Shown: positions 9 to 53,198 of the stretch, piece by piece
How positions within the stretch are numbered: the stretch's first letter is position 1
How the letters are laid out: the number at the start of each line of letters is the position of its first letter
IMG/VR virus record: IMGVR_UViG_3300024308_000302
Coordinates: 186,001-250,000 of that record
Length of the DNA stretch: 64,000 bases
Direction: 5' to 3' (one strand)
Program-made: the position numbers and the translations under genes
Notes under the pieces: generated by a model
Database searches by the model: none
Told to the model about the DNA's origin: nothing
What the model saw: only the letters and a program-made list of their open reading frames with translations

Positions 9-464
9 TTAACGGTTCCAATAATTTTCACTATCAACCCAACTGCCGGGTTCAGGTGCTACAGTAGGATATGAATTCAAGTCTTTTGAACAAATTTCAA
101 AAATATCAGTAGTTCCTTGCGTGATTACATGGTTGCCTTTTTGTATACCTGCTGGCATGTTAGTTGGAAAACCATATAAATTATAGCCAATTATAGATCC
201 ATTTAATTGAGCTATCACATTACCCTTTTTATAAGGATATGTATCAGCATTATATTCAGCATAAAAAGTAGTTGAATTAAACGTGCATGGAACAGGTTCT
301 TCTGGGATTACAGGAGTTTCAGTCTCTAAACTTGAAATAATGATTGCATTATTAGGTAAATGTCCACCACGATCAAGTTCTAATGGGATTTTCATTACAA
401 AATCGGCAAAAACAAGCGGGCTTAAAAACAATAATGTTAATGTAAATAGCGATGTCTTTTTCAT
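9..464 (-). CDS. secreted protein, PLExxxGGxLP family member 1
   Basis: Signal peptide ending VFA, then DFVMKIPLELDRGGHLPNNAII, P/E/T linker and a Cys-bounded domain homologous to the three upstream paralogs. Confidence 0.85.
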   Translation of the reverse strand: MKKTSLFTLTLLFLSPLVFADFVMKIPLELDRGGHLPNNAIIISSLETETPVIPEEPVPCTFNSTTFYAEYNADTYPYKKGNVIAQLNGSIIGYNLYGFPTNMPAGIQKGNHVITQGTTDIFEICSKDLNSYPTVAPEPGSWVDSENYWNR

Positions 465-520
465 AATCTTAAAATAGTTATCCTAATAATATTATACACT
501 ATAATATATATATAACAAAT

Positions 521-545
521 AAAAAACCATCATAAGATGGTAATT
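521..545 (-). terminator. intrinsic terminator
   Basis: ACCATC-ATAA-GATGGT hairpin with an A-tract on the left (U-tract on the minus strand). Confidence 0.65.
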
Positions 546-571
546 ATTAAGACAACATATAATTAATATAG

Positions 572-1231
572 TTACAATGCTATATTAACGCCAACAGATT
601 CAAACTCTTGAATGATACCACTATTCCAATCATCACTTGGATTATGAACATCCGCCATACAATTACCATTGCTGGACATATAATACAAATTAGTAACAGT
701 AGCTCCATAACTTGAAGCAATGCCATCAACTGTACTTCTTTTATCCAAGCAAGCAGTTTCAGCAGCATTATCATTACCACCCCATAATGGATGATTTAAT
801 ACTGGTTTAGTATTTAAATTGTCACCACATATTTGATAATAGTTTGCTTGCATAATTGAATTCATTAATTTACCACGCTTAACACCAGAAGGAATCTGTT
901 GAGGATAACCAGCTAAATTATAGCCAATGAGATCACCATTGTAATAATATTCTGTATCGCCAACAGTATAAGGAGTTTCTGGTTTTCCAAGTTTAACAAC
1001 GACAATAAAATCACCATTGTCAGGATTGAAAAGACAATTAGAATCATTATCTGGGTTGCTTTCATTACCGTTACCAATGATAATACTATTATCTGGTAAA
1101 CGACCACCATTAAGAACTTCCAAAGGAACTTTAGCAGTATAAGTAGCTGCAAAAGATAATGGTGTTATCAATACAGTGAGAAGCATTATTTGTTTTGTTA
1201 TATTCATAAAAGAAAAGATATAATTATTCAA
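572..1231 (-). CDS. secreted protein, PLExxxGGxLP family member 2 (start possibly 1207)
   Basis: Signal peptide ending SFA; TYTAKVPLEVLNGGRLPDNSIII; two Cys-pair domains. Confidence 0.88.
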   Translation of the reverse strand: MNNYIFSFMNITKQIMLLTVLITPLSFAATYTAKVPLEVLNGGRLPDNSIIIGNGNESNPDNDSNCLFNPDNGDFIVVVKLGKPETPYTVGDTEYYYNGDLIGYNLAGYPQQIPSGVKRGKLMNSIMQANYYQICGDNLNTKPVLNHPLWGGNDNAAETACLDKRSTVDGIASSYGATVTNLYYMSSNGNCMADVHNPSDDWNSGIIQEFESVGVNIAL

Positions 1232-1296: not shown

Positions 1297-1908
1297 TTAC
1301 ATACCAATACCAATACCAATTTCATTAAAATCATGTACAATACCATCCCAACCACCTTCTGGATACCTAACATCTGCCATACAATTACCACTGATGTAAT
1401 ATAACCCAGTAACAATCGTTCCATAATTTGCAGCAATAGCATCAGCTTCTGATCTCTTATTTAGACAAGCTTGTTGTTGAGGATCTGACGGAATACTTGG
1501 AAGCCCAGGTGGTGGTACGGCAGGATAGCTACCTAAGTTATCACCACAAATCTCATAAAGTTCACCATATTCATCAGTTGACATGAATTTACCAGCAGAT
1601 AGACCTGCTGGAACATTAACACCATCTTCTGTTGAATAACCAATGAGGTTAGAATTATATGAATAATAAGTTCCACTCTCTTCTATAATGACAAAAGTAC
1701 CAGAATTTTCATCATAATTATATTCACAATTACCTAATTCTGGAGTAGTTGGTTTAGGCGATGAAACATCACCAATGATAATGCTATTGTTTGGTAATCT
1801 GCCACCATTATTGACTTCTAATGGAATTTTAGCAATATAATCAGCAAAAGAAAAGTTTAAAGAAGCTATTAATGCAGCAAATAGAAGAGGTTTTTTTATA
1901 TTTATCAT
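1297..1908 (-). CDS. secreted protein, PLExxxGGxLP family member 3
   Basis: Signal peptide ending SFA; DYIAKIPLEVNNGGRLPNNSIII; same Cys pattern as members 2 and 4. Confidence 0.88.
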   Translation of the reverse strand: MINIKKPLLFAALIASLNFSFADYIAKIPLEVNNGGRLPNNSIIIGDVSSPKPTTPELGNCEYNYDENSGTFVIIEESGTYYSYNSNLIGYSTEDGVNVPAGLSAGKFMSTDEYGELYEICGDNLGSYPAVPPPGLPSIPSDPQQQACLNKRSEADAIAANYGTIVTGLYYISGNCMADVRYPEGGWDGIVHDFNEIGIGIGM

Positions 1909-1975
1909 TATATAAGTAATTGTTTTAATTAAATAATACTATGAGTTACATACAAGTCAATATATTTACAAAAAT

Positions 1976-1999
1976 AAAAAAGCCCCGAAGGGCCATTTT
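1976..1999 (-). terminator. intrinsic terminator (short stem)
   Basis: AAAAAAGCCC-CGAA-GGGC directly after the stop of 2007..2678. Confidence 0.6.
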
Positions 2000-2006
2000 A
2001 GAAAAG

Positions 2007-2678
2007 TTACATAGGAGTTCCTACACCAATTGCATTCAATTCATTAATAACATCATCGCGTGCTTGACCAGAAGGAAGATTGTAATCCGCAGTACAATAA
2101 ACAACATCACTGTCAGTATCCAAGTAAGCACTTAAATTTCTAAGTGTTGATCCATAACTTTCAATAATGCTTCTAACTTGAGGTTCTTTGTCATAACATG
2201 CAGTAATTCGAGGGTCTTCTGGTTCAGGCTCAGGCTCACCAAGATTAGGGGGCGTTACAGTCTCAAATGATGACAAATCATTAGCACAGATTTCAGAATA
2301 ATTAGCTCCAGTTTCAACATCAGTAAACATAACTTTACCACTACTAACACCGGCTGGAACATATGCAGGATACCCAGCTATATTGTAACCAATAAATTGA
2401 CCATTATATAAATATATTGTATCACCCGGAGCAAAAGGAATAAATGGATCTGACAAAGTGAATCTCACAACACTTGTGCCATTATAACGATCATATGCAC
2501 AGTTTCCCACTGGTGTTTCTGGATTAGTAGGTGTTGATGAACCATCACCTATTACAATACTACCTGTAGGCAAACTGCCACCTTGAAGGACTTCAAGAGG
2601 TATTTTAGCTGTATAACCAGCAAAAGAGTAAATTGGGATAATTGCAAGTGCAATTAATGTGAGTTTTTTGATTGACAT
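2007..2678 (-). CDS. secreted protein, PLExxxGGxLP family member 4
   Basis: Signal peptide ending SFA; GYTAKIPLEVLQGGSLPTGSIVI; PEPEPE linker before a second Cys domain. Confidence 0.88.
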   Translation of the reverse strand: MSIKKLTLIALAIIPIYSFAGYTAKIPLEVLQGGSLPTGSIVIGDGSSTPTNPETPVGNCAYDRYNGTSVVRFTLSDPFIPFAPGDTIYLYNGQFIGYNIAGYPAYVPAGVSSGKVMFTDVETGANYSEICANDLSSFETVTPPNLGEPEPEPEDPRITACYDKEPQVRSIIESYGSTLRNLSAYLDTDSDVVYCTADYNLPSGQARDDVINELNAIGVGTPM

Positions 2679-2766
2679 ATAAATAACATTATAATATTAG
2701 TTACCTAAAATATTAATCGATATTAGATATAAGTCAATGTCATATCCATAAATAAAGTTAACTGAA

Positions 2767-4064: not shown

Positions 4065-5459
4065 TTACTCTTTATCTAACAAAGTTGACATCAATCCAAT
4101 TGGTCGTCCAGTGGAACCATTATGGTCACTTGTACCAGCAATGTCTAAATGAACCCATTTTTCTTTTGGAGCAAATTCACGAAGGAAAACAGCACCATTA
4201 GTAGCACCAGCACCTTGACCTAAGCAAAGGTTATTTAAGTCTGCTACATCACTATCCAAGAAGTGTTTATAATCATCACTCAATGGAAGTCTCCATACAG
4301 TATCACCTGACTCAATGCCTGCTTCAATAAACAGTGCTGACAACTCATCATCTTCTGTAAATAAACCAGAGTGAACATGGCCAATAGCAGAAATAACAGC
4401 ACCAGTTAGCGTTGCAAAGTCAACAGTCAATGCACCATTGAATGTTTGAGCATGACAAAGAGCATCAGCAAGAACAAGACGGCCTTCTGCATCAGTATCT
4501 TCTACTTCAATAGTTTTTCCATTTTTTGCAGTAATAACATCACCCGGTTTCAAAGCACCTGCATCTGGCATATTTTCACAAGTTGCAATGATAGCAACAA
4601 CATTCTTTTTGGAATTAGTACGAATTGCATAAAGCAAAGTACCAAGAACGGTTGCAGCACCACCCATGTCACCTTTCATACGGCCCATGCCCTTCGATGG
4701 TTTGATAGAGATACCACCAGAATCAAAAGTAAGACCTTTACCAACTAAGACAATAGGATCATCACCTTCTTTGCCACCATTGTATTCAATAGTTAATAGG
4801 TGTCCTTCTTCTACTGAGCCTTTTGATACAGCATACAAAGATCCATAACCTTTTTCTTCAAGTTCTTTTCCACTTACAACAGAGACTTTAGTTTTATTAC
4901 TAAGTCCTGCAACTCGCTTGCCTTCTTCAACCAAAACAGTTGGGGTAAGATAATTTGATGGCATATCAATCAATTTCTTTTTAAGAAGAATTGCTTCTGC
5001 TAATGCAACGCCAAAAGACAGGTCTTTTTCAAAAGCTCCAATATCAGAAGAATCATTAAAAAGCAACGAAATATTTTTAGGTGTTACAGCAGTAGTGTTT
5101 GTTTTTGCTGACCAAGGAACAGAATTTTTAACAACAATAGATGATACAAGTTTTTTCATATCAATCAAATCTGAAATTACACAAATATCAGTAATATTTG
5201 ATGGTAATTTACTGATAGCGTTACCAATGGCATCTTCTACTTTTTTAGAATTTTTAGATAAGTGAACAAATGAGTAGTAAACACCAGAATAAAAAATAGA
5301 AAAATCTGATTTATCCAAATACTGGGTCAAATCTTTAGGAATATCAGGGTGAATATCAATCCCATCTTCACTAGATGAAAAAGTCGTTACAATTGCTTGT
5401 GATTTTGAAATGGCAGTAACGATTGAAACAGAAATGTTATTAAATTTATTGTCTAGCAT
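4065..5459 (-). CDS. pepA: M17 family leucyl aminopeptidase
   Basis: Motifs LVGKGLTFDSGG, MKGDMGGAA, DTDAEGRLVLAD, ATLTGA, WVHLDIAG; AGGAG RBS. Confidence 0.95.
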   Translation of the reverse strand: MLDNKFNNISVSIVTAISKSQAIVTTFSSSEDGIDIHPDIPKDLTQYLDKSDFSIFYSGVYYSFVHLSKNSKKVEDAIGNAISKLPSNITDICVISDLIDMKKLVSSIVVKNSVPWSAKTNTTAVTPKNISLLFNDSSDIGAFEKDLSFGVALAEAILLKKKLIDMPSNYLTPTVLVEEGKRVAGLSNKTKVSVVSGKELEEKGYGSLYAVSKGSVEEGHLLTIEYNGGKEGDDPIVLVGKGLTFDSGGISIKPSKGMGRMKGDMGGAATVLGTLLYAIRTNSKKNVVAIIATCENMPDAGALKPGDVITAKNGKTIEVEDTDAEGRLVLADALCHAQTFNGALTVDFATLTGAVISAIGHVHSGLFTEDDELSALFIEAGIESGDTVWRLPLSDDYKHFLDSDVADLNNLCLGQGAGATNGAVFLREFAPKEKWVHLDIAGTSDHNGSTGRPIGLMSTLLDKE

Positions 5460-46089: not shown

Positions 46090-47924
46090 GATAATCTCTG
46101 TTTTAATTTAACTTTGTTTTCTTTAATGACACCATTTTCTTTTAAGTAACTTTCAAGTGAATCAATGGTACTTTCTGTCATTGAGTGTTCTTCTCTGTTT
46201 GCATAAAGAGCTGCTTTTTGTGCAATTTCAATTTGTTTAGTAATATCTGAACCATATAACTCATCATCATTTTTTAAGTGTTGAGCATAAGAAGAACCAG
46301 ATTGATCAAGTGTAAAACCAATCATGGAATAAATGTCAGTAGAGCGTTTATTAAAGTCACATAGAATGTATTGTCGATTATTAACGTCCGTTACATACTG
46401 ATCAAAATAATCCTCATCACGAACTATACACCAAGATTTTGAGCCGAAAGCAACACATTGTTCATAATCTTTAACTTCAAAAACATAAATGCCATTATCA
46501 GCATATAACTTATTCAAACCAAATGATTCTAATTTTAAATCAATAACTTCTGGCGTAAATTGATCGAAATAATTCAATAATCCAGTTAGCATATTAATGA
46601 CATCTTCATTGTTTTTCATGGCTGCAATTTTCTTACCAACAAAAGTTTGAAGTTGTGATGAAGTAACTTTATTATCATACAATGATTTAAAATGTGGTTC
46701 GGTTTCTTCATTGAAGTGATGTTTATATTTTGAACTCAAAATAGTATAAGCAAATTGTTTTATTTTGTTTTTATATACAATATTATTAATTTTATCATCA
46801 ATACCTTCAAAATTTTTATCTTTCAAAGAGTTTAAATCAAAATTATATTGTTTCAAAACCGGGTAGTGCTCTAACAATGAATGAACTGTCTTGATAGCGT
46901 TTTCAACACCATCTTCATGTATCTTGTTTTTAAAGAATGGAATATGAGATGGTTTCTTTCTTAGAATAAATGAAACTGCATCACTATGAACATCACGATT
47001 AAATTGTTCTAATTCTTTGTTATTAGTGATTGTGTTATAAACTCCATTCTTTAAATAAGCAATGCTATTATCATTAAAAACTAAAACCTTATTTATTTTT
47101 TGAGAGGATGTAAGTTCAAGTGTAGCAAAGACTTCCTCAGAAATATTTTTAGTATGTATAAACTTTTCTAAAGAGTTATCACTAGGAATTTTTGATTCTT
47201 GTTCTATGAATTGAACAGCCTGAGATATCAAATATGTAGGATCTAATTTGGTGATTTCGTTTTTTACTGTCTGAATATAATTATTATTAGCAGATTCATA
47301 CTTATGATACGAATCATAAAAATCTTTAATATCTGGTATTGCATCAACTAATTTATTAATTGATTTTATAATGTACCCCTTATCTTCTTCATGTAAAAAA
47401 GATTTAGACAATTGTTCATTTAAAACATAATATGAGAATAAGAATTTATTAATCAAGACATAGTTCTTTTGAAGATCAGCAGCAAAATCTTCAACTATTT
47501 CGCGTTTAGTAATCAAATCATCAGTTATAGATTCATCAAAATGATCAAACTCTTCCATCTTTTCTAAATACAAGTTATACCATGCTTTATTTAACTCTTT
47601 ATTATTTTTAACAACATCACGTACTTGCATTTTTTTAGTGTAATCTGGAGCAACTTTGCTATAATGATCAACAGCATCAGCAGTTGATTCAAATTTGATA
47701 TGATCAGTCTCTTTTATTATATTTAAGATATTATCTAATCTATTTATGGTTTCAGATAAAGGAACTGCGTGTTCATTGACAGAGTTTACTTTATTCTCTT
47801 TGAAGAAAGGTATAAATGTTAATTCGTTATATTTTAATTTAGCAGAACTGTAACTCCAAAGAGAACCACCAACTCTTAATTCATTAAGGCTATCAATTTT
47901 ACTTAAAATTTCTTCAAGATTCAT
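46086..47924 (-). CDS. gene A of duplicated operon (paralog of 25023..26924; start refined to MNLEE)
   Basis: AFGSKSWCIVRD, KIKQFAYTILSSKYKHHFN. Confidence 0.82.
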   Translation of the reverse strand: MNLEEILSKIDSLNELRVGGSLWSYSSAKLKYNELTFIPFFKENKVNSVNEHAVPLSETINRLDNILNIIKETDHIKFESTADAVDHYSKVAPDYTKKMQVRDVVKNNKELNKAWYNLYLEKMEEFDHFDESITDDLITKREIVEDFAADLQKNYVLINKFLFSYYVLNEQLSKSFLHEEDKGYIIKSINKLVDAIPDIKDFYDSYHKYESANNNYIQTVKNEITKLDPTYLISQAVQFIEQESKIPSDNSLEKFIHTKNISEEVFATLELTSSQKINKVLVFNDNSIAYLKNGVYNTITNNKELEQFNRDVHSDAVSFILRKKPSHIPFFKNKIHEDGVENAIKTVHSLLEHYPVLKQYNFDLNSLKDKNFEGIDDKINNIVYKNKIKQFAYTILSSKYKHHFNEETEPHFKSLYDNKVTSSQLQTFVGKKIAAMKNNEDVINMLTGLLNYFDQFTPEVIDLKLESFGLNKLYADNGIYVFEVKDYEQCVAFGSKSWCIVRDEDYFDQYVTDVNNRQYILCDFNKRSTDIYSMIGFTLDQSGSSYAQHLKNDDELYGSDITKQIEIAQKAALYANREEHSMTESTIDSLESYLKENGVIKENKVKLKQRLS

Positions 47925-47998
47925 GTTTAAATTATTATTTGATTGTATTTTTATATTGTAACATATAAACAAGAAAAAAATAGACTAAAAAAAACAAT

Positions 47999-48020
47999 AA
48001 AAAAGAGGCCGAAGCCCCTT
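47999..48020 (-). terminator. GAGGC-family terminator (one mismatch)
   Basis: AAAAAAGAGGC-CGAA-GCCCCTT. Confidence 0.75.
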
Positions 48021-48039
48021 AAAAGTTAGATTAATGTTA

Positions 48040-48726
48040 TTAACTCAAAGACAAGATACTATTTTTATAGATATCAAAAGGATTTGAAGAATCTGATGAT
48101 TCTGCACAAATACCACAAGATTCCCATTTTTTACCAATCATAGAGAGGAATGTGTTGATAAATTTCACTTCTGCCAGATAAGGTAAATCTGATTCATTAA
48201 ATACATTAGGAACAATACTCCCAGAACGATTTGTTCCTAGCTTTGTTCTATAGGGTTCATCTTCAAAAGTTGGCAATCCTTTAGTTTCACTGTGAATATA
48301 CTCAACGAATCTATCCGAGAAATCATTGAAATTTAGTTTCATATTAGAAAAGCTAGAACGTGCCTTGAAGTCGCTCACAATTGAGTCATAAACATTTTGA
48401 TGACAAGCAAAGAAACTCAATACATAATCTTTATCATCATATTCTACTTCTTTTTCTGATCCACGAAGATTTAGGAAGTCACTCCAAGTAACATGACGAC
48501 CAATCAACTCAGAAATCATGCTTAGCATAAAATCTTCACGGTTTTTATCTTGTGGATCAATATAGAATAGATCTTCTTGAAATACGCCACGAACAGAAAC
48601 AGGAAATGGACGAACATTGACATTAGAAACAGAAGTATCTGTATATTTTTTGCTGATAAGAATAGGAATCAAAACCGCTTTTGGGTTTTGATAAAAAGGC
48701 ATGCCAGTAATAGAACATGTGAACAT
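48040..48726 (-). CDS. hypothetical protein
   Basis: GAGG RBS; 228 aa. Confidence 0.8.
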   Translation of the reverse strand: MFTCSITGMPFYQNPKAVLIPILISKKYTDTSVSNVNVRPFPVSVRGVFQEDLFYIDPQDKNREDFMLSMISELIGRHVTWSDFLNLRGSEKEVEYDDKDYVLSFFACHQNVYDSIVSDFKARSSFSNMKLNFNDFSDRFVEYIHSETKGLPTFEDEPYRTKLGTNRSGSIVPNVFNESDLPYLAEVKFINTFLSMIGKKWESCGICAESSDSSNPFDIYKNSILSLS

Positions 48727-48750
48727 AAATATTACCTCTTTAGTTAAGAA

Positions 48751-49440
48751 TTAATTGGCATCAGGTGTAATAACCTTGCCTACATATCGTTTACCAGTTG
48801 AATAATCAGCATAAAGCTCAAATACAACATAGGTATCGTGGTCTTTCAAATTATCCAGAATAAAACTTTTATCATTATGGTTTGGAACAAGAGGCCCAAC
48901 CATTTCTTGAAGTGTTTCATTAGGCAAAATTGGAAGTAAATGGCTGTTAAAGTTATCTCTCTTAGTACATCCATAACCTTTATAGAGATTTTTACTATCA
49001 ATAATGAATGTATTTAGATCTTCATCTGCTTTAAATTTCAGATAAACAAACTTGTCTTTGATAAGTTGATCACCATCATATAGAAAGTTTGAAGCAAAAG
49101 ATTGAGCATCTACTTTTTTGCGGAAAGTATATTCATTAAAAAGATCAACAAGTGCTTGGCTATCAAATTCCGAAAATCCTCTTTGAACCAAATACTCTAT
49201 TTTTTTTGAAAAAGAAGTATGAAAGTCAAAAGTTTCAAAATAATTATAACAAAGATCAAGATGAATTCTAAAACGATCTTTAATAATAAAGTCACTAGCA
49301 AAACACAAAATGGTAGATTCTGGTGTAGGCGAATGAAGGAATGCAACAGCAATGCTGCTATCTTGTTTACCTAAAATAACATTCAGCTTGGTAAGGAATT
49401 CGTTTTGTTTTTCATGAACTTCTGAAATATTTAGGCTCAT
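48751..49440 (-). CDS. hypothetical protein
   Basis: GGAG RBS; 229 aa. Confidence 0.8.
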   Translation of the reverse strand: MSLNISEVHEKQNEFLTKLNVILGKQDSSIAVAFLHSPTPESTILCFASDFIIKDRFRIHLDLCYNYFETFDFHTSFSKKIEYLVQRGFSEFDSQALVDLFNEYTFRKKVDAQSFASNFLYDGDQLIKDKFVYLKFKADEDLNTFIIDSKNLYKGYGCTKRDNFNSHLLPILPNETLQEMVGPLVPNHNDKSFILDNLKDHDTYVVFELYADYSTGKRYVGKVITPDAN

Positions 49441-49516
49441 TTAAAAGCTCCATCAAAATGTGTGGTGTATTGAATGACATCAGAGATTATATCAAAAATG
49501 ATGGAAAGAATCAAAC

Positions 49517-49540
49517 AAAAAAAGAAGCATACGCCTCTTT
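49517..49540 (-). terminator. degenerate GAGGC-family terminator
   Basis: AAAAAAAGAAGC-ATAC-GCCTCTTT (G-U pair on the minus strand). Confidence 0.6.
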
Positions 49541-49634
49541 CTGATTGCTATATAATGTCATTTTAAGGTTTCATATTATTGATATTTTTCTTTTGTAAGC
49601 ATAGAAGACTAAGTAAATTTAAATAAATTTTAAA

Positions 49635-50096
49635 TTAAAGTACAAATAGTTGTTTAAATTCTTCTTTAGTTAGCGTTCCATCAATATAGGCTTGTGTTAC
49701 ATTATAATAAGATCCATTTTTATATTTTTCTAATATTCTTTTACCACCAATATATTTAACAACTGTACTTATGTATAATAGTTTTTCAGGTATTTCTTCT
49801 GGTTCCTGTATATGCTCTTTTTTATGTTCATTTATAAAATAATCATACCTTTTACTGCTTTCTTCATCATCATAAAAATGAGTATGAAGGTAAAATTCTT
49901 CAATATTGTCAAACAGTTTAATAGAATCTGGATTAGAATCATGAATAAATAAATAAACGCCACTTTTTTTACTGATAATACTATTACCTGAAAGATCTCG
50001 GGCTAAAACTTCAGAATTTCCATCAAGAAGAAATAACTCTGAGTTAAATTTTATATTATCCTGATTAATATTAATAGTAAAATACTTTGATTTCAA
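49635..50096 (-). CDS. SUKH/SMI1-KNR4-like immunity protein (tentative)
   Basis: TTG start with AGGAG RBS, 1 nt after the nuclease stop; LARDLSGNSII...GVYLFIHD...KLFDNIEEF matches the SUKH core pattern. Confidence 0.6.
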   Translation of the reverse strand: MKSKYFTININQDNIKFNSELFLLDGNSEVLARDLSGNSIISKKSGVYLFIHDSNPDSIKLFDNIEEFYLHTHFYDDEESSKRYDYFINEHKKEHIQEPEEIPEKLLYISTVVKYIGGKRILEKYKNGSYYNVTQAYIDGTLTKEEFKQLFVL

Positions 50097-50097
50097 T

Positions 50098-50614
50098 TTA
50101 ATTTACTCCTGAGTTTCTTAAAAATGAAGCTCCACCTTGATGACGTACACTATCATGTACAATTCTTTTAACTAAAGACATTGATTTTCCATCAGGCTCA
50201 TGATGAAAGATAAGGTCATTTTTATTTACAAAGTCTATATTATCAATCCCTGAATAAAGACTTTGTATAAAATCGATGAAGTTTATAAATTTCAGTAGCC
50301 CTTTCTTCTGTAATTGGAATAAGATTTAATAATTTAGACTTTTCTGAGTTATGTTCAAAAACATTATAAAACCAAGAACCAACAGCAGCAGTATAGGTAT
50401 TCCCCGGAGCACATGAAACTCTTTTAAATTTTGGAATTGGATTGCCAAAACCATCAACAGTAGTAACAGTTGAAATATAAAGAGCTGAATTATCTCCTTT
50501 ATCACTATCAATATAAAACTTTGAACCCAAATAAGGATTGTCTTTATACAATTTAATAACTTCAAGTAATACAAACAATAAAAATAGAGAGCAAATAATA
50601 AGAATAATATTCAT
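50098..50614 (-). pseudogene. frameshifted WHH-type HNH/EndoVII nuclease with an N-terminal membrane anchor
   Basis: The 50243..50614 frame has a TM helix and DGFGNPIPKF. The +1 frame, open 50325..50098, encodes LIFHHEPDGKSMSLVKRIVHDSVRHQGGAS (WHH-domain pattern). Confidence 0.78.
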
Positions 50615-50682
50615 ATAGAAATCCTATAATAAAAAACAATAAATAGCAGTCTATCATTATACTACTTATAAATTTCCTTCAC

Positions 50683-50711
50683 ATTATAACAAAAAATGGT
50701 AGATTTGTAAA
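50683..50711 (-). promoter_or_regulatory. sigma70-type promoter of the nuclease-immunity pair
   Basis: Minus strand TTTACA-17 nt-TATAAT with extended TG. Confidence 0.7.
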
Positions 50712-50887
50712 CAATTATAAAGAATATCACCTGTAAAATATTTGAAGGCAACTAGAAGCTTAGCCAAAGTAATAAAAAAGATGATTATATAAAGAACACT
50801 TTTGTTAAATGTAAAATTTTAATTTAACTTATTGATTGAATATAAAAAGTAGATATGATTAAATAATTAAAGACAAAGGTAAAAGAA

Positions 50888-51199
50888 ATGGAATATATAA
50901 ACGCTAACGGAATAAATAATAACTCAAATCAACCACAACCAGAAAATGAAGAAGTAGATAAATGTATTAAATATTTAAAAAATATAATAGAAAATGATGT
51001 ATATAACAAAACCACTAGCAGCTATGCTCTTAAACATTTAATAGACAAAGAAGAGACATATGTCTCAAATGGTGCATTTATAGAAGCATTGCGTATATTA
51101 AAAATGAGTTATGAAAGATGTTCTGAAGAGTCGCCAAATGTTTGGGTAAAATTTGATATAAAAGATTTAGAAAGAGCAATAAAAGAATACAAAAGTTGA
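50888..51199 (+). CDS. small hypothetical protein (SSYALKH...YVSNG motif)
   Basis: 103 aa; followed by a terminator; the motif recurs in phage proteins, function not assigned. Confidence 0.72.
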   Translation: MEYINANGINNNSNQPQPENEEVDKCIKYLKNIIENDVYNKTTSSYALKHLIDKEETYVSNGAFIEALRILKMSYERCSEESPNVWVKFDIKDLERAIKEYKS

Positions 51200-51200
51200 T

Positions 51201-51225
51201 AAAAAAGAGGCTTCGGCCTCTTTTT
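51201..51225. terminator. GAGGC-family terminator (exact 20-mer, plus orientation)
   Basis: AAAAAAGAGGC-TTCG-GCCTCTTTTT. Confidence 0.88.
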
Positions 51226-51316
51226 ATCATCACTCTACATTATTTTTTCTTCTTGCTACGCTCATCAAACTTCTCAAATGTAGCATTTGCATATATAGAA
51301 AGATAATTTAAAAAAA

Positions 51317-51898
51317 TTATGCAATTAGATCATATTTTAATTTATGATCATTGATTTTCTGTTTAAACATTTCAGTCATTTCATCTAATGTTAAAAGATG
51401 AAGATGTTCTTCTAGCTCATACCAACATCTAAAATCTTTTAAATAAGAGATAATCATTTCTTTATCACAAGGACCAAGAAGAATATAATAAATTTTATAC
51501 TTTTCACGACATGAAAACTTCTCAGTAATATACTCAGAATATTTTTTTAATTCTACTACAAGTCTACCAATAAGTTCTTCATTTGCTTTTTTAACATTCA
51601 CCGTTTTTTCTGAAATAGATTTAACTTCAATATTTAAATAATAATCCGCAAAATCGGCAATTTTAAATGCTTCTGACGACCTGAAATTACTTTCTCTCTT
51701 GTGTAACCGCACTTGGCTGTCTAAAACAAATGGAAATCTGTTGAAATATTCAGCTTTTACAGTCTCACCTTTTTTTAAAGCCATCTGATATAATTTTACT
51801 AATTTATCACGTTGATTAATAAAACAACCAATTTCTTTAAGCCTTTTTTCAACAATCTTCTCTGCTTTCTTTCCATTTATATACGAAACTTTAGACAT
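51317..51898 (-). CDS. PD-(D/E)XK restriction-like nuclease
   Basis: N-terminal GKKAE helix; IADF...LNIEVKS catalytic D...ExK pattern. Confidence 0.65.
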   Translation of the reverse strand: MSKVSYINGKKAEKIVEKRLKEIGCFINQRDKLVKLYQMALKKGETVKAEYFNRFPFVLDSQVRLHKRESNFRSSEAFKIADFADYYLNIEVKSISEKTVNVKKANEELIGRLVVELKKYSEYITEKFSCREKYKIYYILLGPCDKEMIISYLKDFRCWYELEEHLHLLTLDEMTEMFKQKINDHKLKYDLIA

Positions 51899-52067
51899 TA
51901 GAATATAAACCTTTATATCTTGAATTTGAAAGTATTATAGCATGAAGACTGTTTTCATGCTACTATTTTTTGTTGTTGGCTGAAATAAGATAGTCCATAG
52001 ATTTAGTATTGAGTTGATTTTTTTTATTTTGATAATAAAATTTTAATAATTAATAAAAGAATAAAAG

Positions 52068-53198
52068 ATGACAGAAATTAAGAATATAAGAATATTATTA
52101 GAATACTATTTTAATAATTTTAAAGATGAATACGCAATAGCTACTTCAGTATTAATGTATGTAGATACAAGTAGCGAATTTGCAATAAAAAAAGAAATTG
52201 AGAAAAGAGTTGATCTTTTTGACAATAAAGATATAGACATTAAAGATAAATGTGAAAAAGTTTTTAATATTTTAGAAGATATAAAAGAAAATATTGGATT
52301 AAATTTTGGTAAAAACGAACAAATATTATATAATGAAAATAAATTTACATCAAGCTTCAAATTGCTTTCTGATTTTTGCAAAGGTGCTTCAATAATAAAT
52401 TCTGCATATTCCAAGGAATATATAGATATGACAGGAAAAGGATATAAAAGAATGTTGTCACAATTATTGACAAAAATCAATAACAACTTAATTGAAGTCA
52501 TTATTGAAAAAAAGAATAATAATCTTGATAGTATAGTAAAATCAGAAACTGATTATATAAGTAATATGAAAAGTAATAAAACAAATAATGGCATAAAATT
52601 GCTTAATTATCATGCTTCAATAGAAAGGGATAGAAAAGAGTATATAGAAAATGAAATAAAAAAAATAAATAATGATAATAAAATAATTGGTGAAGCAATA
52701 GGTTGTTTTTTGTTAAACTATCATAAAACATACGAATTTGAAATAGATCATTATACCGAATTAATAAAACACTTAAGAAAAAATATAGAGCCAAAAGAAA
52801 GAACTGAATTTGAAGGTGTGATACAAGCATCAGATTATGCTATTAGCTATTGGGCTACTAATTTTGACAAAATAAAAAGTGAAGAACAAAAAATAAATGA
52901 TGAATTTGAAAGTTGGAATTTAAAAAGCTTTCTTAGCTCTGTAGTTGCAGGAAAATTATTGACACAGAAAAATATTGACGAATTAACTTTTATAAGTGAG
53001 TTAAGGTTTATTAACAACAATAACGGGCAAGAAATGAACAGTATTGAAGTTAAAAAAATATTTGATAAAGCAATGGAAGAAAAACAAAAAATTAAACAAA
53101 AAGTAAAAGTAAAGGAACCAGAAATACTAAAAGAAATAGAAAAAAAAGAAGAAAAAATAGGTTTTATAAAAAGAGGCATAAATTGGTTTTATAAATAA
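52068..53198 (+). CDS. helical hypothetical protein with an amphipathic C-terminal tail
   Basis: 376 aa, very A-rich; ends KIGFIKRGINWFYK. Confidence 0.78.
   Translation: MTEIKNIRILLEYYFNNFKDEYAIATSVLMYVDTSSEFAIKKEIEKRVDLFDNKDIDIKDKCEKVFNILEDIKENIGLNFGKNEQILYNENKFTSSFKLLSDFCKGASIINSAYSKEYIDMTGKGYKRMLSQLLTKINNNLIEVIIEKKNNNLDSIVKSETDYISNMKSNKTNNGIKLLNYHASIERDRKEYIENEIKKINNDNKIIGEAIGCFLLNYHKTYEFEIDHYTELIKHLRKNIEPKERTEFEGVIQASDYAISYWATNFDKIKSEEQKINDEFESWNLKSFLSSVVAGKLLTQKNIDELTFISELRFINNNNGQEMNSIEVKKIFDKAMEEKQKIKQKVKVKEPEILKEIEKKEEKIGFIKRGINWFYK

What the first reader, a model, noticed from the sequence alone, without database searches (positions are those of the whole stretch)
49635..50711. Frameshift-concealed WHH/HNH nuclease toxin coupled to a SUKH-like immunity gene
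Seen: the 123-aa ORF (TM helix, then TVDGFGNPIPKF) stops at 50243. The +1 frame is open from 50325 to a TAA at 50098 and reads ...FIQSLYSGIDNIDFVNKNDLIFHHEPDGKSMSLVKRIVHDSVRHQGGASFLRNSGVN. Removing one T from the CGA-TTT-TAT run (plus strand 50269..50272) gives a protein of about 171 aa. The next gene starts 1 nt after that TAA, with its RBS inside the nuclease tail, and carries LARDLSGN...GVYLFIHD...LFDNIEEF. Established: [WF]HH-x2-DG-x2-MxLV-x3-H-x4-HxGG is the WHH clade of HNH/EndoVII polymorphic-toxin nucleases, typically followed by SUKH (SMI1/KNR4) immunity genes. Inference: a membrane-anchored nuclease-immunity module on a phage-like element. It may be inactivated, mis-assembled, or switched on by +1 slippage or phase variation at UUUU next to a rare CGA codon.
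Basis: partly seen in the sequence, partly recalled or inferred. Interest (0 to 1): 0.8.

Follow-up and report, generated by a model that had tools for sequence, protein, structure and literature searches.

The report
Toxin gene stub with orphan immunity gene
What looked like a nuclease toxin hidden behind a frameshift is the last 46 codons of a lost toxin gene, left in front of its intact antidote (immunity) gene and lying by accident just behind an unrelated, complete small membrane-protein gene; this is a common end state of bacterial toxin-immunity pairs.

Summary
The +1 frame piece scores above Pfam's cut-off for WHH (31.2 vs 25.1 bits). The same sequence, without indels, stands in assemblies from two other studies, so it is not a sequencing error.

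The frameshift reading does not hold. The 123-aa ORF is a complete stand-alone gene: a 98% relative, a 72% relative and a paralogue in the same record all end at the same place, with unrelated DNA behind them. Homology to the 98% relative stops at 50238/50239. A co-occurring strain in a food metagenome joins 50239 to 49589. So 49590..50238 is a 649-bp cassette.

Its first 46 codons match only the C-terminal end of intact toxins (137 and 257 aa, nuclease domain about 130 aa). The first ~90 residues of the domain, the signal peptide and any start codon are missing.

Those intact toxins are each followed by a 41-45% homologue of the 153-aa protein. That protein is therefore the cognate immunity protein, and it is under purifying selection (dN/dS 0.17-0.33). 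It is not a SUKH protein by Pfam, hhalign or Foldseek.

Relatives form an erosion series of the toxin tail: 0, 22, 46, 50 or more codons, then intact. Verdict: an orphan immunity gene with a toxin remnant, a known kind.

The parts
50683..50711 (-). Sigma-70-like promoter match (TTTACA, 17 nt, TATAAT with TG; 11 of 12) upstream of the 123-aa gene. It is the likely start of the transcript that also carries the cassette.
   Evidence: This is a consensus scan only, and the number of matches in the region is no higher than in shuffles.
50243..50614 (-). ORF A: a complete 123-aa gene for a small protein with an N-terminal hydrophobic helix. Function unknown. It is not part of the toxin.
   Evidence: Four family members of 120-124 aa end at the same place (alignment A3). 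There is no Pfam, PHROG or NCBIfam hit. There is no similarity to the intact toxins P0010 and P0012.
50269..50272 (-). The T4 run proposed as the slip site. It lies inside ORF A, 31-34 nt upstream of the cassette edge.
   Evidence: Position 50272 is C in the 98% relative L004. The contigs of run X3 break at this position. No contig shows an indel here.
49590..50238 (-). A 649-bp cassette holding the toxin remnant and the immunity gene. It is present in this strain and absent or replaced in close relatives.
   Evidence: The alignment with L004 loses all similarity at 50238. A contig in run X3 joins 50239 to 49589 (table 5).
50098..50238 (-). The 3' remnant of a WHH (HNH/EndoVII) nuclease toxin gene: 46 codons plus TAA. 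The HH dyad and both helix histidines are intact. There is no ATG/GTG/TTG before the motif.
   Evidence: Pfam WHH scores 31.2 bits, positions 12-41 of 43; Colicin-DNase matches only positions 63-96 of 96 and scores below its cut-off. The tail is 82% identical to the last 44 aa of the intact 137-aa P0010.
50106..50110 (-). AGGAG ribosome-binding site of the immunity gene, inside the toxin tail and 9 nt before the TTG start.
   Evidence: The same arrangement is seen in L008, L011 and L012.
49635..50096 (-). An intact 153-aa immunity gene with a TTG start. It belongs to an unannotated family found next to this clade of WHH toxins.
   Evidence: Homologues follow the intact toxins. The family has 38 clusters and no Pfam domain. 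dN/dS is 0.17-0.33 against the five closest relatives. The AF2 model has pLDDT 84.8 and no fold match.
49519..49542 (-). Terminator-like hairpin with a T run, just beyond the cassette. It is the likely end of the ORF A-immunity transcript.
   Evidence: 1 found, against 0.2 expected in shuffles.

Best explanation
The locus holds two unrelated things side by side.

1. A complete 123-aa gene for a small membrane-anchored protein of unknown function.
2. Directly behind its stop codons, a 649-bp cassette (49590..50238). It consists of the last 46 codons of a WHH-type HNH nuclease toxin gene and the toxin's intact cognate immunity gene.

The toxin stub has no start codon and no signal peptide. It lacks the first ~90 residues of the nuclease domain, so it makes no toxin. 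The 'frameshift' is only the chance that the stub's frame stays open for 29 codons back into the 3' end of the neighbouring gene.

The immunity gene keeps the original toxin-immunity junction, with its ribosome-binding site inside the toxin tail and its start one base after the toxin stop. It is most likely transcribed from the promoter of the upstream gene. It probably protects its bearer against WHH nucleases of this clade delivered by competitors.

Shown: the cassette edges, the truncation, the pairing with intact toxins elsewhere, and selection on the immunity gene. Inferred: expression, co-transcription and the protective role.
For: - ORF A stands alone in a 98% relative (L004), a 72% relative (L003) and a paralogue in the same record (L089). 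They are 120-124 aa, end at the same place and have different DNA downstream.
- No fused relative of about 171 aa turned up in a search of 5.8 billion proteins that admitted lengths of 68-215 aa.
- Similarity to L004 ends at 50238. A contig of run X3 joins 50239 to 49589.
- Contigs from a soil run (X4, 49781-50744) and from 'organism A' (X5, 49757-50574) match with 0 differences and 0 gaps.
- The nearest toxins, P0010 (137 aa) and P0012 (257 aa, signal peptide), match the window only over their last 41-44 residues.
- Each of them is followed by a 155- or 151-aa homologue of the 153-aa protein, at 41-45% identity with E 2e-38 and 3e-35.
- Relatives form an erosion series. There is no tail in L005, L007 and L009. 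About 22 codons without the HH dyad remain in L091, on the 1.54-Mb JGI contig from which the window's record appears to be cut. The window has 46. L090 has 50 or more behind another unrelated gene.
- Immunity-gene dN/dS is 0.17-0.33 against the five closest relatives.
- A promoter-like and a terminator-like site bracket ORF A plus the cassette.
Against: - The 46-codon tail is still an open frame with all four catalytic histidines. Its dN/dS against intact relatives is low (0.07-0.18, with dS saturated). That fits a recent truncation, but it would also fit a tail that is still used.
- No transcript or protein data were available. Expression of the immunity gene and silence of the tail are inferred.
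- Contigs drop rare variants, so a minority length variant at the T run cannot be excluded.
- The alternative allele in X3 was seen only as a joint, with 'between: not known'.
Confidence: 0.85

Rival explanations
1. One reading: one gene for a membrane-anchored WHH nuclease, interrupted by a frameshift that is bypassed by +1 ribosomal slippage or reversed by phase variation at the T run after CGA.
For: The +1 frame is open across the junction. A UUUU run would allow tRNA-Phe to re-pair. The tail keeps its catalytic histidines and shows low dN/dS. In L090 the tail also lies in the +1 frame of its upstream gene.
Against: - ORF A is a complete gene in three other contexts.
- The slip site lies in ORF A sequence shared with a relative that has no toxin tail, and that relative has C at 50272.
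- The codon following UUU is UAU, at 39.8 per 1000, so no slow A-site codon follows the slip site. CGA, at 4.2 per 1000, precedes it.
- An open +1 frame of this length occurs in 19% of ORFs in this record.
- The product would lack about 90 residues of the nuclease domain.
- No contig shows an indel.
- No fused homologue exists among the proteins searched.
Confidence: 0.04
2. An assembly or sequencing artefact: a one-base error in a homopolymer, or a chimeric join.
For: Homopolymer runs are error-prone, and the record comes from a metagenome.
Against: The same sequence across 50239..50325 and across both cassette edges stands in contigs of runs from other studies and habitats (X4 soil, X5 organism A) with no gaps. 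It also stands in the JGI contig L010.
Confidence: 0.01
3. A retained orphan module that serves as a reservoir. In this view the tail is kept as a homology handle, so that recombination with a full-length WHH toxin gene can swap in a new toxin end plus immunity gene, as proposed for orphan cdiA-CT/cdiI and rhs modules.
For: The architecture matches orphan modules: a start-less toxin 3' piece followed by an expressible immunity gene (PMC3150448). The tail is not degraded. The same record holds an intact WHH toxin with a SUKH-1 partner 83 kb away.
Against: The cassette does not lie behind a full-length toxin gene. The intact toxin in the record shares only 47% protein identity over 34 aa with the tail, and blastn detected no DNA similarity. 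No demarcating motif comparable to VENN lies at the 5' edge. The varying tail lengths in relatives look like decay.
Confidence: 0.08

Closest known systems
Orphan toxin-CT/immunity modules of CDI and Rhs loci (Poole et al. 2011, PMC3150448)
   Same: A 3' toxin fragment without translation initiation signals is followed by an intact immunity gene that can be expressed. Both are homologous to intact toxin-immunity pairs elsewhere. The presumed benefit is a wider immunity repertoire.
   Different: The module here is not in an array behind a full-length cdiA or rhs gene. It sits behind an unrelated small membrane-protein gene. The fragment is much shorter than a whole toxin domain (46 of about 130 aa), so unlike the tested CDI orphans it cannot encode an active toxin. 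There is no VENN-like boundary motif.
WHH clade of HNH/EndoVII polymorphic-toxin nucleases (Pfam PF14414; Zhang, Iyer and Aravind 2011, PMC3113570)
   Same: The tail has the HH dyad and two helix histidines with the spacing of the family. Its Pfam score is above the cut-off.
   Different: Only the beta-beta-alpha-metal core is present. The tryptophan is replaced by phenylalanine, as in the intact relatives P0010 and P0014. The N-terminal two thirds of the domain and the trafficking part are absent.
SUKH (SMI1/KNR4) immunity proteins
   Same: The protein has the same genomic role, encoded immediately downstream of a nuclease toxin. It has a short motif resemblance, and a protein-language-model search lists SUKH clusters among its neighbours at 0.87-0.88. 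A WHH + SUKH-1 pair at Pfam's SMI1_KNR4 cut-off exists in the same record.
   Different: No SUKH profile matches any of 7 family members. hhalign against the record's own SUKH-1 family gives a probability of 1%. A confident model (pLDDT 84.8) finds no SUKH structure, or any other, in the PDB.
Programmed +1 frameshift genes (prfB type; named from established knowledge)
   Same: There are two overlapping frames and a homopolymeric slippery run.
   Different: No slow or stop codon follows the slippery codon. No conserved fused product exists. The upstream ORF is a complete gene in relatives.

Membership tests
WHH nuclease domain (PF14414) | Profile score above Pfam's gathering cut-off | tested here: met
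   31.2 bits against a cut-off of 25.1, E 1.8e-7, profile positions 12-41 of 43. Confirmed in the genome scan at 31.5 bits.
WHH nuclease domain (PF14414) | [W]HH tripeptide plus two histidines on the helix (metal ligands and general base) | tested here: met
   The tail reads FHH...H...H. The HH dyad and both helix histidines are invariant in alignment A4. W is replaced by F, as in the intact relatives P0010 and P0014. The features are as described in PMC3113570.
Functional WHH/Colicin-DNase toxin gene | A complete nuclease domain (about 130 aa in the nearest intact relatives; Colicin-DNase PF12639 matched end to end) | tested here: not met
   Only profile positions 63-96 of 96 of PF12639 are matched, at 22.5 bits, below the cut-off of 25. 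The tail aligns only with the last 41-44 residues of P0010 and P0012. ORF A does not supply the missing part.
Functional WHH/Colicin-DNase toxin gene | Its own start codon and an N-terminal export or trafficking region in the same frame | tested here: not met
   There is no ATG/GTG/TTG in the frame between the upstream stop and the HH dyad. P0012 and the record's intact toxin have signal peptides.
Functional WHH/Colicin-DNase toxin gene | DNase activity and toxicity | not testable with these tools
   This needs a bench assay.
SUKH (SMI1/KNR4) immunity superfamily | A match to a SUKH family profile (PF09346, PF14435, PF14567, PF14568 and others) | tested here: not met
   None among 7 family members at E up to 5. 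None among the precomputed Pfam hits of 38 clusters.
SUKH (SMI1/KNR4) immunity superfamily | Profile-profile similarity to a SUKH family | tested here: not met
   hhalign of A5 against A7 (the record's SUKH-1-like family) gives probability 1.1% over 31 columns.
SUKH (SMI1/KNR4) immunity superfamily | The SUKH alpha+beta fold | tested here: not met
   The AF2 model has pLDDT 84.8. Foldseek finds nothing at E <= 0.001 in the PDB or BFVD. The language-model neighbours include SUKH clusters only at 0.87-0.88, which the tool rates as a lead only.
Cognate immunity protein of a polymorphic toxin | Conserved position immediately downstream of intact toxins of the same clade | tested here: met
   Homologues follow P0010 (4-nt overlap) and P0012 (1-nt gap, in 4 contigs).
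Cognate immunity protein of a polymorphic toxin | Binds and neutralises the toxin | not testable with these tools
   This needs co-expression or pull-down experiments.
Programmed +1 ribosomal frameshift | A slippery codon followed by a slow or stop codon in the A site | tested here: not met
   The sequence is CGA UUU UAU. UAU occurs at 39.8 per 1000 codons. CGA (4.2 per 1000) lies upstream of the slip site.
Programmed +1 ribosomal frameshift | A shift site and two-frame layout conserved in relatives, with a fused product homologous to single-frame proteins | tested here: not met
   Relatives have ORF A alone. Position 50272 varies. No fused homologue was found.
Orphan toxin-remnant/immunity module | A start-less toxin 3' fragment plus an intact immunity gene, homologous to intact pairs elsewhere | tested here: met
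   definition from PMC3150448.
Orphan toxin-remnant/immunity module | Located in an array downstream of a full-length toxin gene of the same system | tested here: not met
   The upstream gene is the unrelated ORF A. The nearest intact WHH toxin lies 83 kb away and is of another subclade.

The most novel reading that the evidence does not exclude
The 46-codon tail is not decaying junk but is kept by selection. On this reading it is either translated at a low level by slippage or re-initiation from the ORF A message, giving a minimal beta-beta-alpha-metal peptide that the immunity protein binds, or it is kept as a recombination handle for swapping toxin ends. Separately, the 153-aa protein would define a new immunity family and fold for WHH nucleases, with no relative in Pfam, the PDB or BFVD.
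Probability: 0.08. Interest if true: 0.55.

Novelty: new member of a known kind. Interest (0 to 1): 0.2.

Why it matters
The case is a caution for genome scans. A strong catalytic motif in an open alternative frame next to a short ORF invites a 'hidden frameshifted toxin' reading. Here, comparison with close relatives shows an ordinary toxin stub beside an orphan immunity gene.

The useful residue is modest:
- An unannotated immunity family of about 150-aa proteins (38 clusters) is now tied by conserved gene order to one clade of WHH/Colicin-DNase-like toxins. It has a confident predicted structure with no known relative.
- There is a clean natural series of toxin-gene erosion with retention of the immunity gene, in an AT-rich uncultured lineage.

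Tried and rejected
- Megablast of 47000-53000 against the phage collection found no match.
- The search for related loci with the immunity protein or its alignment found nothing in viral contigs, genome contigs or metagenome contigs.
- The search for related loci with the tail found nothing in viral contigs.
- A first structure model from a 7-sequence alignment was too poor (pLDDT 57), so its fold search is meaningless. It was redone with 36 sequences.
- PepA of the window, used to place the organism, reaches only 33-46% identity to many phyla and gives no placement.
- PHROGs, NCBIfam and Pfam on ORF A and on the neighbouring genes gave nothing usable.
- The idea that ORF A's 'DGFGNPIPKF' stretch is the missing N-terminal half of the nuclease domain was rejected. 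BLASTP against P0010, P0012 and the record's intact toxin gives E above 1.
- The idea that L090 and the window share one truncation point was rejected after inspection. The L090 tail appears to reach several codons further upstream.
- Reading through by TGA=Trp was rejected, because a TAA follows the TGA directly.

Full report
**Observation.**
- A 123-aa ORF runs from 50614 to 50243. It has a hydrophobic N-terminus and ends in TGA followed directly by TAA.
- The +1 frame is open from 50325 to the TAA at 50100..50098 and reads as quoted.
- A 153-aa ORF (50096..49635) starts with TTG one base after that TAA. An AGGAG at 50110..50106 lies inside the tail.
- The T4 run is at 50272..50269, after CGA.
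- Pfam places the +1 piece in WHH (PF14414): 31.2 bits against a cut-off of 25.1. The match to Colicin-DNase covers only its last third and is below the cut-off.
- Neither the 123-aa ORF nor the 153-aa ORF has a significant Pfam hit.

**Where the window lies.** It is bases 186001-250000 of a 290,157-bp IMG/VR record labelled provirus.
- A near-identical copy of the locus (its 153-aa protein is 99% identical) lies on a 1.54-Mb JGI metagenome contig, from which the 290-kb record appears to be cut. The composition is about 29% G+C.
- The record has bacterial-type signals: Shine-Dalgarno sites and UUCG-loop terminators.
- It carries a PepA gene and 35 tRNA genes with many duplicates.
- It gives no Pfam Terminase_6N or HK97-capsid match.
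- I could not decide whether it is viral or cellular, so 'phage-like element' rests on the label alone.

**Not an error.** Logan contigs of runs from other studies carry the same sequence.
- X4 (soil) covers 49781-50744 and X5 ('organism A') covers 49757-50574, each with 0 differences and 0 gaps.
- No contig shows an insertion or deletion. Contigs drop rare variants, so a minority length variant is not excluded.

**The 123-aa ORF is a complete gene.** A search that admitted proteins of 68-215 aa found only two relatives, of 123 aa (98% identity) and 124 aa (72% identity). No fused form of about 171 aa turned up.
- In L003 the 124-aa gene is followed by a 71-nt spacer and unrelated genes.
- In L004 the 123-aa gene is followed two bases later by a different gene with its own ATG.
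- A paralogue of 120 aa in the same record (L089:1749..2111) ends at the same alignment position.

**The cassette edges.** The DNA alignment of the window with L004 is nearly identical up to 50239 and unrelated from 50238 on.
- L004 also has C in place of the first T of the run (50272).
- In run X3 the contigs break at exactly 50272. One contig joins 50239 to 49589, skipping 649 bases.
- So 49590..50238 is a cassette that some co-occurring strains lack or have replaced.
- The first codon of the cassette in the tail frame is the isoleucine of 'IDFVNKNDL...'. Everything upstream in that frame is the alternative reading of ORF A's 3' end.
- That stretch being open for 29 codons is ordinary. It happens in 19% of ORFs in this record.

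**What the tail comes from.** phmmer of the 46-aa tail against 1.84 billion representatives found 19 proteins.
- The nearest are P0010 (137 aa, 82% identity) and P0012 (257 aa, with a signal peptide).
- The match covers only their last 41-44 residues.
- In these proteins the nuclease domain starts about 90 residues earlier, at an 'NGxWSGxxGNSxFWPN' motif (alignment A4).
- ORF A has no similarity to that missing part.
- The tail has no ATG/GTG/TTG before the HH dyad.

**The immunity gene.** P0010 is followed by a 155-aa protein (4-nt overlap). P0012 is followed, in four contigs, by a 151-aa protein (1-nt gap, as in the window). These are 41% and 45% identical to the window's 153-aa protein, with E 2e-38 and 3e-35.
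- The family has 38 clusters of 112-169 aa (all but one 149-169 aa), none with a Pfam domain.
- Against the five closest relatives its dN/dS is 0.17-0.33; against the two more distant partners of intact toxins it is 0.38-0.53.
- SUKH membership was tested three ways and failed. No SUKH profile matches any member. hhalign against the record's own SUKH-1-like family gives a probability of 1%. A confident AlphaFold model (pLDDT 84.8) has no match in the PDB or BFVD at E <= 0.001.
- A language-model search lists SUKH clusters at 0.87-0.88, which the tool itself rates as a lead only.

**An erosion series.** Relatives of the immunity gene occur with toxin tails of different lengths.
- No tail: L005/L006, L007 and L009.
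- Tail present but cut off by the contig end: L008, L011 and L012.
- About 22 tail codons lacking the HH dyad: L091, elsewhere on that 1.54-Mb contig.
- 46 codons: the window.
- 50 or more codons behind yet another unrelated gene: L090.
- A complete toxin: L084 and L085.
- This is the pattern expected when the toxin gene decays and the immunity gene is kept.

**The frameshift idea.** Canonical +1 sites place a slow or stop codon after the slippery codon (established knowledge of prfB-type sites).
- Here UUU is followed by UAU, which occurs at 39.8 per 1000 codons.
- CGA (4.2 per 1000) lies before the slip site and is not the rarest Arg codon.
- Even if slippage occurred, the product would carry a third of a nuclease domain.
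- Its low dN/dS against intact relatives (0.07-0.18, with dS saturated) and its intact histidines are the only points in favour of a tail that is still used. A recent truncation explains them equally well.

**Likely operation (inferred).** A promoter-like site at 50711..50683 and a terminator-like hairpin at 49542..49519 bracket ORF A plus the cassette. The immunity gene would therefore be co-transcribed with ORF A and translated from its own AGGAG/TTG. It would protect against WHH nucleases of the P0010/P0012 clade.

**Comparison with what is known.** The architecture is that of orphan toxin-CT/immunity modules (PMC3150448). It differs in not lying behind a full-length toxin gene and in holding far less than a whole toxin domain. 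WHH toxins and their frequent, but not universal, pairing with SUKH proteins are described in PMC3113570. A WHH toxin (221 aa, 61.6 bits) with a partner scoring at Pfam's SMI1_KNR4 cut-off does exist in the same record, 83 kb away. It belongs to another subclade, with 47% identity over 34 aa and no DNA similarity detected by blastn.

**Verdict.** The locus is an orphan immunity gene with a start-less toxin remnant, a new member of a known kind, and of low interest.

Noticed in passing
L001 (G000:C1:150975-154091), outside the window; toxin at L001:1477..2142 (-), partner at L001:750..1517 (-): An intact WHH toxin of 221 aa with a signal peptide (WHH 61.6 bits, Colicin-DNase 57.6 bits). It overlaps a 255-aa partner that scores at Pfam's SMI1_KNR4 (SUKH-1) cut-off. 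This is the WHH + SUKH-type pair of this record. Its N-terminal region resembles that of P0012 (31% identity over 255 aa).
   Followed up: partly
L089:1749..2111 (-) = G000:C1:170248-170610: A 120-aa paralogue of ORF A (54% identity) sits among several tRNA-Leu and tRNA-Arg genes. ORF A therefore belongs to a small multi-copy family of unknown function.
   Followed up: partly
L091:3200..3968 (1.54-Mb JGI contig, near 1.357 Mb): A second orphan immunity paralogue (P0040, 155 aa) is preceded by only about 22 codons of a WHH tail. It lies next to a type I restriction HsdR gene and a Na/Ca exchanger gene.
   Followed up: partly
window 51199..51225, and at least 13 other places in the 290-kb record: A repeated 22-30-nt hairpin, AAAAAGAGGCTTCGGCCTCTTTTT, with a UUCG loop and A and T runs on its two sides. 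It looks like a bidirectional intrinsic terminator used many times. One copy lies just upstream of the intact WHH toxin gene.
   Followed up: partly
G000:C1, whole 290-kb record; none in the window: ARAGORN finds 35 tRNA genes with many duplicates (at least 7 tRNA-Leu-UAA and 5 tRNA-Met among the 28 printed), including one with a CUA (amber-reading) anticodon. There is no Pfam Terminase_6N or HK97 capsid match, and a PepA (M17) gene lies at window 4065..5459. Whether the record is a huge phage, a prophage or cellular DNA is open.
   Followed up: partly
L007:358..2692: Two members of the 153-aa immunity family (358..825 and 2243..2692) flank a homologue of the SUKH-1-like partner (1476..2225), with no toxin gene called. 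This looks like an immunity-gene array.
   Followed up: no
L004:1548..1829: In the 98% relative, the site behind ORF A holds a different gene (94 aa or more, own ATG, no Pfam hit). The position behind ORF A seems to be a swap point for cargo genes.
   Followed up: no
window 49057..49196 and 50888..51194: Run X3 holds minority contigs that are 6-17% divergent over these stretches. This indicates a second, related strain in that food metagenome.
   Followed up: no
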